A DNA stretch of 64,000 bases from Obrimoposthia wandeli (taxonomy: Eukaryota), in NCBI GenBank assembly GCA_977020255.1, contig CDROCS010000122.1:682001-746000 (forward strand), in the 5' to 3' direction. The first letter of the stretch is position 1, and each line of letters begins with the position of its first letter. Shown in pieces: positions 973 to 14,474 of this stretch. The translations under genes and the position numbers were made by a program. The notes beneath the pieces were generated by a model. That model was not told where the DNA came from, made no database searches, and saw only the letters and a list, made by a program, of their open reading frames with translations.

Positions 973-1992
973 TTACTTTTTTAACGGTTTCAACTGATCG
1001 ATCGGCCAGCGTGGGTACGCTTTTACGCTCAAGTCCATCAATTCTTGATTTTTCAATCGCTGCATTCCTGCATACGCGATCATTGCACCGTTATCCGTAC
1101 AAAACTCTGTACGAGGGTAAAAAACCTCACCATTCAATTTTGTCATCAAAGAGCCTAGCTCTTGGCGTAAGTATGTATTTGCACTTACTCCGCCCGCGAT
1201 GACTAAGCGTGTCAACCCCGTTTGTTTCAGTGCGCGTTTACACTTAATTGCCAATGTATCAACCACCGCTTCTTGGAAAGCAAATGCAATATCAGCACGC
1301 GTTTGTTCGTCATCGTCGTTAGCTCGAATGGTATTTGCAGCAAACGTTTTTAACCCCGAAAAACTGAAGTTTAAACCAGGACGATCTGTCATAGGGCGAG
1401 GGAATTTAAAGCGCCCTTTCGTGCCCTTTTCAGCCAGTTTGGATAACAACGGACCACCAGGGTAATCTAAGCCCATTAGCTTGGCGGTTTTATCAAAAGC
1501 CTCACCTGCTGCATCATCAACAGACTCACCTAAAATTTGATATTCACCAACAGCTTGCACTTCAACCATCATGGTGTGGCCGCCAGAAACCAGCAGTGCC
1601 ACGAATGGAAAATCAGGGGCATTATCTTCTAGCATCGGAGCCAGTAAATGCCCTTCCATATGGTGTACTGCCACAGCAGGTAAACCCCACGCATAAGCAA
1701 GGCTACGACCAATGGTTGCACCCACTAATAACGCACCAACCAAACCCGGGCCAGCAGTGTAAGCAACACCATCAAGATCTGCAGGTGTTAATCCCGCTTT
1801 TTTCAATGTTTCTTTGATCAACGGAATGGTTTTTTTAACATGATCACGAGAAGCTAACTCAGGTACAACGCCACCATAATCAGCATGTAATTTCACCTGA
1901 CTGTAAAGCTCATGTGACAGTAAACCTTGCTCATCATCGAAAATCGCAACGCCAGTTTCATCACAAGACGTTTCGATGCCCAATATACGCAT
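973..1992 (-). CDS. tsaD: tRNA threonylcarbamoyladenosine biosynthesis protein TsaD
   Basis: [16 protein letters not shown] and [10 protein letters not shown] motifs; divergent from rpsU. Confidence 0.98.
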
Positions 1993-2138
1993 AACAACCT
2001 CTATACTATTAGGGTACCAATCTGATAAATTACGCTGTCTCTTGGAGCAAACAACGCTTCAAACTGGGATTAAGGGGAGTAATTGAAGCTTATGTTACCG
2101 CCCTTGACAGAAATTAACCAGTTCATGGTGGTGAATGC

Positions 2139-2168
2139 TTTACAAACACCCCTAGATCAGATTAGAAT
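2139..2168 (+). promoter_or_regulatory. Candidate sigma70 promoter of the rpsU operon
   Basis: TTTACA-N18-TAGAAT, same architecture as the E. coli rpsU promoter. Confidence 0.6.
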
Positions 2169-2243
2169 TTCGCACCATTTTTAAAATTAGCTGACTATAT
2201 TGATCGTCAGCATATAACCGAATCACTCTGAGGTGAGTATTAC

Positions 2244-2459
2244 ATGCCAGTAATCAAAGTACGTGAAAACGAACCGTTCGACGTAGCACTACGTCGCTTT
2301 AAGCGCTCTTGTGAAAAAGCAGGTATCCTTTCTGAAGTTCGTCGTCGCGAGCACTTCGAAAAGCCAACTACTGTACGTAAGCGTGCTAAAGCAGCGGCAG
2401 TTAAGCGTCACCTGAAGAAATTGGCTCGCGAAAACGCGCGTCGCGTTCGTCTGTACTAA
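2244..2459 (+). CDS. rpsU: 30S ribosomal protein S21
   Basis: [27 protein letters not shown]; SD GAGGTG. Confidence 0.99.
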
Positions 2460-10628: not shown

Positions 10629-11086
10629 GTATCTGGATACTTACAATACCAGTCTAGACAAGTATCTGATCATCCTTGCTGGTTAAAATTGCTTATAACT
10701 GCGTTAGAAATTTGGCAATTAGAACCACTAGTTACTTCAATTTCTGCCTTGTTATTATCAATTTTTCCTACGCAATAATCTGACCATTTACTTATCCAGA
10801 ATGGTATAACGTATCGAATACTCACACTTTTCTATATCCTCCCTATCTGCATTTACTCACAAATTCATCTTTTCTATATCGCACCCTAACCGCATAAATC
10901 GTATACTTCATAATAAGCAGATACTTCTAGGGTATAAACCGTCACTCGCTGGTATTTCAATTTCCACCAGAGCGACTAGCCTAATAAGTAATACTTTCTT
11001 GCTGACTAATATTCATCGAAATATCCTATGCAAATGAAAACTCATACTTAGCATTAGGGAATAACAATAAAAATGAGAGGAATTTA

Positions 11087-11740
11087 GTGTCTAGTCCTAC
11101 TTTGACTAATAAGATTATGGAAGTTATACGACAAGATATTCTGCTTGGAGAGCTTTCTCCGGGCCAAAAGCTTGTCGTTGCCGACTTGAAAGCACGCTAT
11201 AACGTCGGAGCCTCACCCATTCGCGAAGCGCTGGTTCAATTATCATGGAAGAAATACGTCAAATTCGCCCCTCAAAAAGGCTGCTGGGTTGCACCTATTT
11301 CGGTAGATGAACTTGAAGATCTGTTTGAGACTAACCTGATTTTATCCCGCGTATTATTAGAACGAGCAATCATCAATGGTGACGAGGCATGGGAACTCAA
11401 TATTCTCACTACCTATCATAAGTTAAGCAAAATAAACCCTGCGGCATCAGATGTTGATTTTACAGAATGGGAAAATCGGCACAGTGAATTCCACCTTGCT
11501 TTACTTGCCGGTAGCCAATCACCAGTAATGCTGGAACTATATCGTGAAGTTTATGAGCAAATTGAACGTTACCGCCACGTTTGGGTAAGCCGCAATCGCC
11601 ACTTTGAAGAACGTTATCATGATAATGGTGAACATGAAGTGATGATGAAAGCAGTGCTAGGACGAGATACACAACGGGCTCTCGACTTACTGAATAATCA
11701 CTTTAAGCGAGCTGTCGAAATCATTAAGGCATACATCTAA
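11087..11740 (+). CDS. GntR-family (FCD) transcriptional regulator, CsiR/GlaR-like
   Basis: wHTH GASPIREAL; FCD domain W...H..FH.ALL and H..MMKAVL.RD; GTG start with SD GAGAGG. Confidence 0.88.
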   Translation: MSSPTLTNKIMEVIRQDILLGELSPGQKLVVADLKARYNVGASPIREALVQLSWKKYVKFAPQKGCWVAPISVDELEDLFETNLILSRVLLERAIINGDEAWELNILTTYHKLSKINPAASDVDFTEWENRHSEFHLALLAGSQSPVMLELYREVYEQIERYRHVWVSRNRHFEERYHDNGEHEVMMKAVLGRDTQRALDLLNNHFKRAVEIIKAYI

Positions 11741-11778
11741 TTCTTATATCGATTGCCATTTAACGGACACCGATAGAT

Positions 11779-11805
11779 AAAGCTCGATCGCCATGATCGA
11801 GCTTT
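11779..11805. terminator. Hairpin between the convergent GntR gene and small ORF, likely bidirectional terminator
   Basis: AAAGCTCGATC-GCCAT-GATCGAGCTTT. Confidence 0.75.
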
Positions 11806-11849
11806 CTACAAACATACTTCACCACCGTCGCATACATTCATCAAATAGA

Positions 11850-11981
11850 CTACCAACCAAAGATTTCCTTATGATGCGTATTCAGCAGAAGTACTGCGAG
11901 TAGAAAATAAATTGCACTCACCTTAAAGCCAAGTATCAATAAACACAGACTCATAAATCGCACTAGAAATTTGTTTACCAT
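11850..11981 (-). CDS. Unannotated 43-aa hydrophobic small protein MVNKFLVRFMSLCLLILGFKVSAIYFLLAVLLLNTHHKEIFGW
   Basis: ATG at 11981 with GAGGAGG 7 nt upstream; TAG at 11850-11852; own hairpin downstream; below the ORF-track length cut-off. Confidence 0.75.
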   Translation of the reverse strand: MVNKFLVRFMSLCLLILGFKVSAIYFLLAVLLLNTHHKEIFGW

Positions 11982-12087
11982 TATCAATCCTCCTCTATAA
12001 GCAAGAATCCTTTCGCACTAACCTTTCCGCACTCCATACATTAGGCTATAGATATTCAGTACCAACACCAAATCAATGCAGCCCTAT

Positions 12088-12107
12088 TATTAGACTTTAG
12101 TCTAATA
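12088..12107. promoter_or_regulatory. Operator-like palindrome upstream of the small ORF
   Basis: TATTAGACT-TT-AGTCTAATA, perfect 9-bp arms. Confidence 0.55.
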
Positions 12108-12195
12108 CCCATGTTTTGAGCACTGTTTGTATACTGGTCTCTCTTCTACCTTGTCGGTGATAAAAACTCACTTTCACATGACTATAACTAACAAG

Positions 12196-12240
12196 AAAAA
12201 AATAAGCCCGATATAGGGTTTACCTACATCGAGCTTATTT
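12196..12240 (-). terminator. ilvIH terminator
   Basis: AAATAAGC-C-CGAT...ATCG-A-GCTTATTT with an A run that gives a U tract on the minus strand. Confidence 0.7.
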
Positions 12241-12258
12241 AGTACGTCTAATTTAATG

Positions 12259-12756
12259 TTATGCTTTTAGTGCGCGCTCTCCACGAGCAATACCGACAAC
12301 ACCACTCCGTGCTACTTCAACAATATCTGTAGCCTCACTAACTGCAGCAATGAATGCATCTAACTTTTCACTCGTGCCTGCTAGCTGAATAGTGTAAATT
12401 TGGCTTGTAACATCAACAATTTGACCGCGAAAAATATCTGCCGTACGTTTCACTTCAGCACGGGCAAAACCACTCGCTTTCACCTTAACTAACATTAGCT
12501 CTCGCTCTAAATGTTCAGCTTCGGTTACATTACTCACTTTCAAAATATCAATTAGCTTATGTAATTGCTTCTCAATTTGTTCATAAACAGCATCATCTTC
12601 AACATGAGTCGTAATGTTTAAACGGGATAATGTTGAGTCGTCTGTCGGTGCAACAGTCAGTGTTTCAATGTTATAGCCACGCTGAGAGAACAGACCAACA
12701 ACTCGAGAAAGTGCGCCGGGTTCATTTTCTAGTAATACCGATATAATTCTGCGCAT
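12259..12756 (-). CDS. ilvH: Acetolactate synthase III small (regulatory) subunit
   Basis: [22 protein letters not shown] domain; start at 12756 forms a TAATG overlap with the ilvI stop. Confidence 0.96.
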   Translation of the reverse strand: MRRIISVLLENEPGALSRVVGLFSQRGYNIETLTVAPTDDSTLSRLNITTHVEDDAVYEQIEKQLHKLIDILKVSNVTEAEHLERELMLVKVKASGFARAEVKRTADIFRGQIVDVTSQIYTIQLAGTSEKLDAFIAAVSEATDIVEVARSGVVGIARGERALKA

Positions 12757-14474
12757 TATGTTCTCTCCGTTTTGCTTAACCACATTTCGCTCATTGAACC
12801 ACCACGGATCAACATTGGATATACATGCTCGGTTTCATCAATACTAATATCAACGAACACCAACTTATCTTTCATGGCTAGCGCTTTTTCCAGCTCACTA
12901 TCCAGTTTCGCTGGATCTGAAATACGCACCCCAACATGTCCGTAAGCTTCTGCGATTGCAGCAAAATCAGGCACTGAATCCATGTACGAATGTGAGTGAC
13001 GACCTTGATAAATCATATCTTGCCACTGCTTAACCATACCAAGAAAGCGGTTATTTAAGTTAATGATTTTAACTGGGATATCGTACTGAAGTGCCGTTGA
13101 TAACTCTTGAATATTCATCTGAATACTGCCGTCGCCAGTCACACAAACGACTTCTGCATCAGGCAAGGCAAATTTCACCCCCATGGCAGCAGGAAGACCA
13201 AAGCCCATGGTGCCGAGACCGCCCGAATTAATCCAACGACGTGGTTTATCAAAAGGATAATACAATGCAGCAAACATCTGGTGTTGACCAACATCAGAGG
13301 CAACATATGCATCGCCATTGGTTAGTTTATAAAGTGATTCAATAACCTGCTGAGGCTTAATACGTTCGTTATTGGTTTCATAACTTAAACACTTACGTGA
13401 ACGCCATGACTCAAGATCTGCCCACCAACTCGCAATCGCCTCTTGATCATTACTGCTCTCTTGCTCATCGAGCATTTTAAGCATGCAATCTAGAACCGTT
13501 TCAGCAGAGCCTACAATTGGAATATCCACCGCGATTGTTTTTGAGATAGAAGATGGATCGATATCGATATGCATGATCGTGGCATTTGGACAATATTTAT
13601 CAACATTGTTCGTGGTTCGATCATCAAAACGAACACCAATACCAAAGATCAAATCTGCATTATGCATCGCCATGTTAGCTTCGTATGTACCGTGCATGCC
13701 TAACATGCCAAGACAGTTTTTATGCGTACCCGGAAACGCGCCTAACCCCATCAGTGTATTAACGACAGGAAGATTCAACGATTCTGCTAATTTTAAGATT
13801 TGCTGATCACATTCAGAGATAACAGCACCGCCACCAACATACAGAACAGGCTTCTTCGCAGATAATAGTGCTTTTAGGCCACGTTTAATCTGACCTTTGT
13901 GCCCTTGCGTTGTTGGGTTATACGAACGCATCGCAATCGATTCTGGGTAGTGATAAGGGAAGGTTTCAGCCGGATTAAGCATATCTTTAGGGATATCGAT
14001 AACAACTGGGCCAGGGCGACCACTAGAGGCTATATAAAATGCTTTCTTGATGATCTCAGGGATATCTTGAGCTTTTTTAACTAAGAAACTGTGCTTCACA
14101 ACAGGGCGAGAAATACCCACCATGTCACACTCTTGGAAGGCATCATTACCAATCAAGTTACTCATAACCTGACCAGAGAAAACAACCATAGGAATAGAAT
14201 CCATGTAGGCGGTCGCAATACCCGTGATTGCATTCGTCGCACCAGGACCTGATGTAACGAGCACGACACCTACATCACCTGTAGCACGTGCATAACCATC
14301 TGCCATGTGTACAGCGGCTTGCTCGTGGCGGACGAGTACGTGTTCGATATCACTCTTCTCATGCAGAGCATCGTAAATATCAAGTACTGAGCCACCAGGG
14401 TATCCGAAGATATGCTTTACGCCTTGATCGATCATTGAACGAACGATCATGTCTGCGCCAGACAACATTTCCAT
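12756..14474 (-). CDS. ilvI: Acetolactate synthase III large subunit
   Basis: [25 protein letters not shown] ThDP motif. Confidence 0.97.

What the first reader, a model, noticed from the sequence alone, without database searches (positions are those of the whole stretch)
11850..11995. Hidden 43-aa membrane protein with a perfect RBS in the GntR-ilvH gap
Seen: a minus-strand ORF, MVNKFLVRFMSLCLLILGFKVSAIYFLLAVLLLNTHHKEIFGW. GAGGAGG lies 7 nt before the ATG. The ilvIH terminator is upstream and a bidirectional hairpin (11779-11805) is downstream, so it looks like an independent transcription unit. About 29 residues are almost continuously hydrophobic apart from a central Lys, and the tail is polar/aromatic (HHKEIFGW). 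The ORF track missed it. Established: small hydrophobic proteins of this size include transporter modulators (AcrZ, MgtS) and type I toxins (TisB, Ldr, Hok). Inference: an uncharacterised regulatory membrane peptide or toxin; I do not recognise its family.
Basis: partly seen in the sequence, partly recalled or inferred. Interest (0 to 1): 0.75.

Follow-up and report, generated by a model that had tools for sequence, protein, structure and literature searches.

The report
Conserved unannotated 43-residue membrane protein gene
The 43-codon reading frame is a real gene under purifying selection for a single-helix membrane protein, found in about 60% of sampled Vibrionaceae species (cholera-group Vibrio included) and in Aeromonas, almost never annotated, in no curated family, and of unknown function.

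Summary
A minus-strand ORF (ATG 11981, stop 11850-11852) has GAGGAGG 7 nt upstream. It lies between the ilvH terminator and a hairpin shared with a convergent CsiR-like GntR gene. The contig is a deep-sea Photobacterium inside a 1.35 Gb eukaryote assembly.

It is a true gene.
- A profile of it hits 241 of 401 sampled Vibrionaceae genomes, nearly always once, full length and without stops.
- Against the nearest relatives there are 6-9 synonymous and 0-1 non-synonymous differences. Variable columns by codon position are 27/13/41 of 43.
- The ORF has no indels, while both flanks are riddled with them.
- RNA-library contigs from three runs cover it.

The family also occurs in Aeromonas, Motilimonas and others, there directly downstream of dusA. 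It has no Pfam, NCBIfam or PDB relative. The large protein search found only 18 representative clusters.

AlphaFold predicts one helix (residues 2-35). R8, Y25 and H36 are near-invariant, and residue 20 is always polar.

A 16-bp palindrome (TTAGACTAAAGTCTAA, 12090-12105) accompanies the gene across families. It also precedes a second unannotated small gene of about 55 codons, usually next to htpX.

Function is unknown. My best guess is a regulated helix-packing modulator of a larger membrane protein. A TisB-like stress toxin is the main rival. Links to PspG and PspC were tested and not supported.

The parts
11850..11981 (-). 43-codon gene for a single-pass membrane protein (stop codon included)
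   Evidence: The sequence is. The frame is intact in relatives. Purifying selection is shown. AlphaFold predicts a helix over residues 2-35 with pLDDT 90.5.
11989..11995 (-). Shine-Dalgarno sequence GAGGAGG, 7 nt before the ATG
   Evidence: Seen. A GGAG, GAGG or AGGA core lies at -18..-4 in 38 of 55 distinct loci of the family, against an 8.5% background.
12088..12107 (.). Perfect 20-bp palindrome (core TTAGACTAAAGTCTAA at 12090-12105); candidate operator of an unidentified dimeric regulator
   Evidence: It is the only match in the window. It is conserved upstream of the ORF in Photobacterium, in Vibrio-type loci and in non-Vibrionaceae loci. A second conserved site stands before another small gene in 8 genomes.
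11982..12087 (-). 5' leader or promoter region between the palindrome and the start codon; transcription start not mapped
   Evidence: RNA-library contig X16 record 3 covers 11795-12119. A candidate TTGATT-16 nt-TATCTA lies 13 nt after the palindrome, the same spacing as TTGAAC in Vibrio-type loci (read by eye). The predicted fold of the leader is unremarkable, z = -0.94.
11779..11805 (.). Hairpin shared by the small gene and the convergent GntR gene; probable bidirectional terminator
   Evidence: Seen. The stem is kept by changes on both sides across clades. It is retained in P. lipolyticum, where the gene itself is deleted.
12190..12240 (-). ilvH intrinsic terminator, which separates ilvIH from the small gene
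   Evidence: The terminator scan reports 18 pairs followed by a T-run.
11087..11740 (+). Convergent CsiR-like GntR/FCD regulator gene, the neighbour that stays linked throughout Vibrionaceae
   Evidence: It carries the Pfam GntR and FCD domains. NCBIfam CsiR scores 158 bits, below the 218 cut-off. It lies tail-to-tail with the small ORF in all 29 Vibrionaceae loci examined that hold the ORF, including those without ilvH nearby.

Best explanation
This is a genuine, translated gene for a 43-residue inner-membrane protein. The protein forms one transmembrane helix, with the N-terminus probably in the cytoplasm and the short HHKEIFGW tail outside.

It founds an uncharacterised family that is inherited vertically in Vibrionaceae and is also present in Aeromonas, Motilimonas and a few other lineages.

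In Photobacterium it is its own transcription unit: ilvH terminator upstream, shared hairpin downstream. It is preceded by a conserved 16-20 bp palindrome that most likely binds a dimeric regulator. The same palindrome also precedes a second small gene, usually beside htpX.

Inferred mechanism: the helix carries a conserved face (G18, polar residue 20, S22/A23, Y25) bracketed by invariant R8 and H36. When induced, the peptide packs against a larger membrane protein and modulates it, in the manner of AcrZ, MgtS or MgrB. It is not a self-acting toxin.

Shown: the gene is real, it is conserved, it is predicted to be helical, and the palindrome is linked to it. Inferred: topology, regulation by the palindrome, and the modulator role.
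For: **The gene is real**
- The frame, ATG and stop are kept in 10 Photobacterium species at 72-100% identity, while the neighbouring GntR drops to 68%.
- The profile hits 241 of 401 Vibrionaceae genomes, with one hit per genome in all but one. It is single copy in G001-G003.
- Nei-Gojobori counts against the closest relatives are 6-9 synonymous and 0-1 non-synonymous differences. The mean pN/pS is 0.20. Variable columns by codon position are 27/13/41 of 43.
- ORF identity to P. sagamiensis is 104/132 with no gaps. The 5' flank gives 73/148 and the 3' flank 52/171, both with many gaps.
- A Shine-Dalgarno core is present in 38 of 55 loci, against 8.5% background.
- RNA-library contigs cover 11795-12119, 11765-11980 and 11621-11965.

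**Membrane helix and topology**
- AlphaFold predicts helix 2-35 and helix 37-41, pLDDT 90.5.
- Across 107 distinct sequences R8 is in 107, H36 in 104, Y25 in 102, S22 in 98, A23 in 96 and G18 in 90. Position 20 is always K, Q, N or H.
- Net charge is +1.8 on the N side and about 0 on the C side.

**Palindrome**
- It is kept upstream of the ORF even where the neighbouring genes differ.
- A second site is conserved before the gene of about 55 codons.

**Against toxicity**
- In Aeromonas-type loci the ORF starts 4 nt after the dusA stop, with GGAG inside the end of dusA.
Against: - No partner protein is known, and no gene neighbour is conserved across all lineages.
- The transcription start is not mapped. 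The RNA evidence consists of contigs from metatranscriptome libraries, which can contain DNA and show neither strand nor ends.
- The regulator that binds the palindrome is unidentified.
- The gene has been lost in the P. phosphoreum clade, and by deletion in P. lipolyticum. It is therefore dispensable.
- A repressor-type palindrome, a long leader and a very hydrophobic peptide with a mid-helix polar residue are also what a TisB- or DinQ-like toxin looks like.
Confidence: 0.6

Rival explanations
1. It is a stress-induced membrane toxin of the TisB/DinQ type. The gene is tightly repressed through the palindrome. On induction the peptide inserts into the inner membrane, self-associates and dissipates the proton motive force, slowing growth.
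For: - The peptide has 43 very hydrophobic residues with a polar residue (K, Q, N or H) in mid-helix.
- A palindromic operator-like site and a leader of 100-250 nt lie upstream in most Vibrionaceae.
- The Shine-Dalgarno sequence is strong.
- The gene is dispensable and has been lost in some clades.
Against: - It is single copy, at a fixed place, across most of a bacterial family.
- No antisense promoter is conserved. The one promoter-like hit on the opposite strand rests on the His-His-Lys codons plus a non-conserved -35, and the whole scan found fewer promoter-like sites than shuffled sequence gives.
- Synonymous sites are saturated between clades, so no overlapping RNA constrains them.
- The fold of the leader is unremarkable, z = -0.94.
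- In Aeromonas the gene is translationally coupled to the housekeeping gene dusA and has no palindrome.
Confidence: 0.17
2. It is a stand-alone copy of the transmembrane half of a PspC domain. It takes part in, or interferes with, the phage-shock or envelope-stress response, for example by pairing with PspB or PspC.
For: - Four of nine members scanned give weak Pfam PspC hits in the same register: residues 5-32 (2-32 in one) against profile positions 28-55 (25-55), E 0.09-0.8.
- They share an LVR motif and the same 9-residue spacing from the Arg to a Gly. A Tyr follows further along the helix.
- hhalign of the family against 30 PspC domains gives P = 3.5e-4 over 17 columns.
Against: - All hits are below the Pfam cut-off (at most 13 bits, against 25).
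- The hhalign probability is only 37%, and such scores are unreliable for hydrophobic helices.
- The N-terminal half of the domain is missing.
- The large HMMER search returned no PspC proteins at E <= 0.001.
- No sigma-54 promoter was found upstream in any of 58 loci.
Confidence: 0.1
3. The transcript acts mainly as a regulatory RNA, alone or in a dual role, and the peptide is secondary.
For: It is a short independent transcription unit of about 330 nt between two terminators.
Against: - Rfam gives no match.
- Conservation follows the codon pattern, not RNA structure.
- The leader and the 3' region diverge quickly and carry indels.
Confidence: 0.04
4. It is a chance ORF in a spacer and is not translated.
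For: Nothing beyond its small size and the lack of annotation in most genomes.
Against: See: frame, start, stop, Shine-Dalgarno sequence and the synonymous bias are all conserved across hundreds of species.
Confidence: 0.02

Closest known systems
AcrZ, MgtS (YneM), MgrB: small single-pass modulators of larger membrane proteins in enterobacteria
   Same: It is under 50 residues with one transmembrane helix. It is chromosomal, single copy and vertically conserved. It is apparently regulated by a dedicated operator. Conserved small and polar residues lie on one helix face.
   Different: There is no sequence similarity. The partner is unknown, and so are the regulator and the inducing condition.
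TisB and DinQ: LexA-controlled type I membrane toxins
   Same: It is a small hydrophobic helix with charged or polar residues in the membrane span. A palindromic operator and a long leader lie upstream.
   Different: The palindrome is not a LexA box. No antisense RNA gene is evident. The Aeromonas version is coupled to dusA. Sequence conservation is much stronger and the taxonomic spread is wider.
PspC domain (PF04024), transmembrane half
   Same: It shares the LVR motif at the cytoplasmic edge of the helix, the spacing from the Arg to a Gly, a Tyr further along, and a weak profile match in a consistent register.
   Different: It scores below the family threshold, lacks the N-terminal amphipathic half, has no sigma-54 promoter and is not found next to psp genes.
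PspG (PF09583), the gene downstream of dusA in E. coli
   Same: In Aeromonas, Motilimonas and the L074 lineage the small ORF sits in the same slot, directly after dusA.
   Different: It is not homologous: hhalign probability is 0.1. True PspG genes exist elsewhere in the Photobacterium, Vibrio-type, Aeromonas-type and Motilimonas genomes checked.

Membership tests
Any curated protein family (Pfam-A, NCBIfam) | Score at or above the family's curated cut-off | tested here: not met
   Nine family members were scanned at E up to 10. The only hits were sub-threshold ones to PspC (best 13.1 bits, against 25), PsaX and RecG. All 116 database clusters carry no precomputed Pfam domain.
PspC domain (PF04024) | Full domain: an N-terminal amphipathic segment (GVCxGxA) followed by the LVR-containing transmembrane helix | tested here: not met
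   Only profile positions 25-55 of 58 are matched, and the peptide begins 4-7 residues before LVR. hhalign gives P = 3.5e-4 and probability 37%.
PspG (PF09583 / E. coli b4050) | Sequence homology to PspG | tested here: not met
   hhalign probability is 0.1. There is no NCBIfam PspG hit. Separate PspG genes are present in the same genomes.
PspG (PF09583 / E. coli b4050) | PspF-dependent sigma-54 promoter upstream | tested here: not met
   No match better than 8 of 10 to TGGCAC-N5-TTGC in 58 upstream regions. The 8/10 matches are not conserved, or lie inside the dusA coding sequence.
Type I toxin-antitoxin (TisB, Hok, Ldr, Ibs, DinQ) | Antisense or adjacent small RNA antitoxin | tested here: inconclusive
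   There is no Rfam hit. One weak promoter-like site on the opposite strand is not conserved outside the coding constraint. No strand-specific RNA data were available.
Type I toxin-antitoxin (TisB, Hok, Ldr, Ibs, DinQ) | Growth arrest or membrane depolarisation on overexpression | not testable with these tools
   This needs a bench experiment.
Type I toxin-antitoxin (TisB, Hok, Ldr, Ibs, DinQ) | Often several copies per genome with a patchy distribution | tested here: not met
   There is one copy per genome in 240 of 241 positive genomes, always at the same place.
Small membrane-protein modulators (AcrZ/MgtS/MgrB class, a functional class rather than a homologous family) | Single transmembrane helix of under 50 residues | tested here: met
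   AlphaFold predicts helix 2-35. The hydropathy maximum of 2.46 falls over residues 14-33.
Small membrane-protein modulators (AcrZ/MgtS/MgrB class, a functional class rather than a homologous family) | Physical binding to a larger membrane protein | not testable with these tools
   No candidate partner emerged, and no neighbour is conserved across lineages.

The most novel reading that the evidence does not exclude
The 43-residue peptide and the unannotated protein of about 55 residues beside htpX (motif YQxAIDxLxCHLG) form a previously unrecognised two-gene small-protein regulon. An unidentified regulator that binds TTAGACTAAAGTCTAA switches it on or off. The regulon is conserved across Vibrionaceae, including V. 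cholerae, and beyond, and it acts in envelope or membrane-protein quality control.
Probability: 0.25. Interest if true: 0.7.

Novelty: new member of a known kind. Interest (0 to 1): 0.55.

Why it matters
Small membrane proteins are systematically missed by gene callers, and few have a known role outside E. coli and Salmonella. This family is present in most sampled Vibrionaceae species, including V. cholerae, V. fluvialis and V. furnissii, and in Aeromonas. Its invariant residues point to a specific molecular contact. Yet it is absent from Pfam and NCBIfam and is annotated only sporadically as 'hypothetical protein'.

The conserved palindrome gives a direct experimental handle: DNA pull-down to find the regulator, and reporter fusions to find the inducing signal. 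It also links the gene to a second hidden small gene beside the membrane protease gene htpX. That makes the biology testable in genetically tractable Vibrio species.

Tried and rejected
- **PspG analogue.** The ORF follows dusA in Aeromonas, Motilimonas and L074, as pspG does in E. coli. There is no homology, no sigma-54 promoter, and real PspG genes lie elsewhere in those genomes. Rejected.
- **PspC relationship.** Only weak, sub-threshold similarity. Kept as a low-probability rival.
- **Rfam.** Nothing over 11000-13000.
- **Plasmid collection.** No DNA match.
- **ESM Atlas.** Best score 0.80, which is at noise level.
- **PDB sequence search** with the family profile: nothing at E <= 10.
- **Homodimer prediction.** Score 0.02, 'no answer'. 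This is evidence neither for nor against self-association.
- **The 55-residue protein as the palindrome-binding factor.** AlphaFold gives three short helices, pLDDT 77. Foldseek against the PDB finds nothing at E <= 0.001, and Pfam finds nothing. Not supported.
- **Promoter assignment by eye** around the palindrome gave inconsistent geometries between lineages. Left open.
- **Literature.** Searches for the peptide motif, the palindrome, Vibrio small-protein and Ribo-seq work, and two guessed V. cholerae locus tags found nothing on this gene.
- **Tools.** The genome search 'relatives' does not work for this genome because the window sits in a eukaryote assembly.

Full report
**1. What is in the sequence**

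On the minus strand the ATG is at 11981-11979, followed by 43 sense codons and TAG at 11852-11850. GAGGAGG occupies 11995-11989, 7 nt before the ATG.

Upstream, the ilvH intrinsic terminator (12240-12200 plus a T-run) is the only terminator-like site the scan reports. Downstream, an 11-bp stem with a 5-nt loop (11805-11779) lies between the small ORF and the stop of a convergent GntR/FCD gene (11087-11740). The ORF listing begins the frame at a TTG two codons earlier, but the ATG is the start shared by all relatives. Rfam finds nothing in 11000-13000.

**2. Where the window comes from**

The window is G000:C122:682001-746000, in an assembly of 1.35 Gb and 6912 contigs. The bacterial contig therefore sits inside a eukaryote assembly. 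The GntR protein is 97-98% identical to those of Photobacterium frigidiphilum, P. indicum and P. profundum. The organism is a member of the deep-sea P. profundum group. Earlier notes of this scan on other pieces of the genome say the same.

**3. Is it a gene?**

In the loci fetched with the GntR protein, the ORF is intact, of the same length and in the same place in several groups:
- the three profundum-group species, at 98-100% identity;
- P. sagamiensis and a Photobacterium MAG, at 84%;
- the four loci of the P. angustum group (P. angustum, SKA34, GB-56, Ph5), at 72-77%.

In that last group the GntR itself is only 68-69% identical.

An alignment of the whole ilvH-GntR gap shows an indel-free ORF whose changes fall on third positions. 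Both flanks are full of substitutions and indels. Against P. sagamiensis the ORF gives 104/132 identities with no gap. The 5' flank gives 73/148 and the 3' flank 52/171.

Nei-Gojobori counts against the nearest relatives are 6-9 synonymous and 0-1 non-synonymous differences. Over 465 pairs, mean pN is 0.16 and mean pS is 0.82. Variable columns by codon position number 27, 13 and 41 of 43.

In 30 of the 31 sequences compared an ATG stands at the aligned start; the one exception (L041) starts one codon later, and more distant members appear to use GTG or TTG. A GGAG, GAGG or AGGA core lies 4-18 nt upstream in 38 of 55 distinct loci, against an 8.5% background.

A profile of eight Photobacterium sequences hits 241 of 401 sampled Vibrionaceae genomes at E <= 0.01. 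There is one hit per genome in all but one, nearly always full length and without stops. The gene is single copy in three Photobacterium genomes and has no second copy anywhere in P. lipolyticum or P. phosphoreum.

The gene is missing from the P. phosphoreum clade, where the gap is about 74 nt. In P. lipolyticum a deletion leaves only the last 16 nt of the ORF, with TAG changed to CAG, between the two retained terminators. One genome (L062) carries a frameshift. A few database entries from V. cholerae and Aeromonas are frameshifted chimeras.

**4. Expression**

Only assembled contigs of metatranscriptome libraries were available. They show neither strand nor ends, and they may contain DNA.
- In run X16 a 326-nt contig covers 11795-12119. 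That is the hairpin, the ORF, the leader and the palindrome. It is separate from contigs on the GntR gene (11512-11761) and on ilvH (12236-12398).
- In run X18 a 224-nt contig covers 11765-11980.
- In run X17 a contig covers 11621-11965.

This is consistent with an independent transcript but does not prove it.

**5. The family**

A word search with a 21-sequence alignment found 116 clusters. None has a Pfam domain. All are named 'hypothetical', 'uncharacterised' or 'membrane protein'. They come from Vibrio (cholerae, furnissii, fluvialis, navarrensis and others), Aliivibrio, Photobacterium, Salinivibrio, Grimontia, Enterovibrio, Veronia, Motilimonas and Aeromonas. The exact protein of this window has no annotated entry in that collection; the best hit is 86% identical.

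The exhaustive HMMER search of 1.84 billion representatives found only 18 clusters at E <= 0.001. All are small proteins or frameshift artefacts. There is therefore no larger parent family. Pfam, NCBIfam, the PDB and the ESM Atlas give nothing significant.

An order-wide sample gave 34 of 401 genomes. These include non-Vibrionaceae lineages with loci of 43-45%, 54% and 57-61% G+C.

**6. Genomic context**

In Vibrionaceae the constant neighbour is the convergent CsiR-like GntR gene, with pykF beyond it. ilvH is upstream only in Photobacterium and some other loci. In Vibrio-type loci a PAS-GGDEF gene is upstream instead.

In the three non-Vibrionaceae lineages examined the ORF lies directly downstream of dusA (71% identical to E. 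coli DusA), on the same strand. In the Aeromonas type the ATG comes 4 nt after the dusA stop, GGAG lies inside the end of dusA, and a terminator follows the small ORF. This is a coupled dusA-peptide operon.

**7. The protein**

AlphaFold with the family alignment gives one helix over residues 2-35 and a short helix over 37-41, with mean pLDDT 90.5.

Among 107 distinct sequences the counts are R8 107, H36 104, Y25 102, L17 101, V7 99, S22 98, L14 97, A23 96 and G18 90. Position 20 is K (74), Q (16), N (9) or H (7). It is always polar but not always Lys.

Net charge is +1.8 before the helix and about 0 after it. By the positive-inside rule this predicts N-in and C-out (the rule is established knowledge). 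The conserved face G18 / polar 20 / S22-A23 / Y25 suggests specific helix-helix packing. That is an inference.

**8. A conserved palindrome**

TTAGACTAAAGTCTAA (12090-12105, perfect over 20 bp) is the only such site in the window. It or close variants (TTCGAC...GTCTAA, TCGAC...GTCGTA, TACGACTTTAGTCTAA) stand 50-250 nt upstream of the ORF in most Vibrionaceae loci. They also stand upstream in the non-Vibrionaceae loci L074-L077, where the neighbours are different. Some loci have two copies. The Aeromonas type has none.

In whole-genome pattern searches, eight of the ten genomes searched hold a second conserved site, TAAGACTAAAGTCTAA; in seven of them it lies 75-85 nt upstream of another small gene of 54-64 codons that Pfam does not recognise. 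Its motif is YQxAIDxLxCHLGxxxxEAxxxLGxD, and it is usually divergent from htpX. This includes the two Photobacterium species that lack the 43-codon gene.

The regulator is unknown. Neither the motif nor the peptide appears in the searchable literature.

**9. Hypotheses tested**

- PspG analogue. E. coli has dusA followed by pspG. However, hhalign probability is 0.1. No sigma-54 promoter is found in 58 upstream regions. True PspG genes lie elsewhere in the same genomes. Rejected.
- PspC-like helix. There are recurrent sub-threshold Pfam hits in one register, and hhalign gives P = 3.5e-4 with probability 37% over the LVR segment. The exhaustive search returns no PspC protein. This is a resemblance, not membership.
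- Type I toxin. There is no conserved antisense promoter, the gene is single copy, the leader fold is unremarkable (z = -0.94), and the Aeromonas version is coupled to dusA. This reading is less likely but not excluded.
- Homodimer prediction. No verdict.
- The 55-residue protein as the DNA-binding factor. No support.

**10. Verdict**

What it does is unknown.

I favour a regulated modulator of a larger membrane protein, at about 0.5 given that the gene is real. A stress-induced membrane toxin comes next, at about 0.17. A PspC-helix-like role in envelope stress follows, at about 0.1.

The family is new in the sense of being uncharacterised and absent from curated libraries. Its kind, bacterial small membrane proteins, is well known.

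Noticed in passing
L122:1261-1428 (-), L123:1259-1423 (-), L120:1252-1446 (-), L131:1584-1751 (+), L136:1594-1758 (+), L137:1252-1437 (-): A second small gene of 54-64 codons that Pfam does not recognise. Its conserved core is YQxAIDxLxCHLGxxxxEAxxxLGxD. It lies 75-85 nt downstream of the same palindrome (TAAGACTAAAGTCTAA) and is usually divergent from htpX and near bioD. AlphaFold gives three short helices (pLDDT 77), and there is no Pfam or PDB match.
   Followed up: partly
window 1-64000 (G000:C122:682001-746000): The window is a Photobacterium (profundum group) contig of at least 746 kb inside a 1.35 Gb, 6912-contig assembly. It is therefore a bacterial associate or contaminant of a eukaryote genome project.
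   Followed up: partly
L005:4655-4830 (P. lipolyticum); L012-L022 (P. phosphoreum clade): Gene loss. In P. lipolyticum a deletion removed the palindrome, the leader and all but the last 16 nt of the ORF, while both terminators remain. In the P. phosphoreum clade the ilvH-GntR gap is only about 74 nt.
   Followed up: yes
L078:2021-2170 (-) and L079-L085: In Aeromonas-type genomes the homologue (49 aa, tail GLH[KR][DE]QLLG) starts 4 nt after the dusA stop codon and has no palindrome. It appears to form a coupled dusA-peptide operon.
   Followed up: partly
L062:1468-1625 (+); proteins P0115, P0117, P0124: Frameshifted copies of the small gene occur in one Vibrionaceae genome and in a few V. cholerae and Aeromonas database entries. 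They are either pseudogenes or assembly errors.
   Followed up: no
L125:1501-1516 and 1607-2302 (+): In one Vibrio-type genome a one-mismatch variant of the palindrome (TTAGACATTAGTCTAA) lies about 90 nt upstream of a different GntR/FCD regulator gene. This could be chance or a clue to the regulator family.
   Followed up: no
L077:2213-2232 and 2303-2320; also L044, L045, L047: Some loci carry two copies of the palindrome, about 90-130 nt apart, upstream of the small ORF.
   Followed up: no
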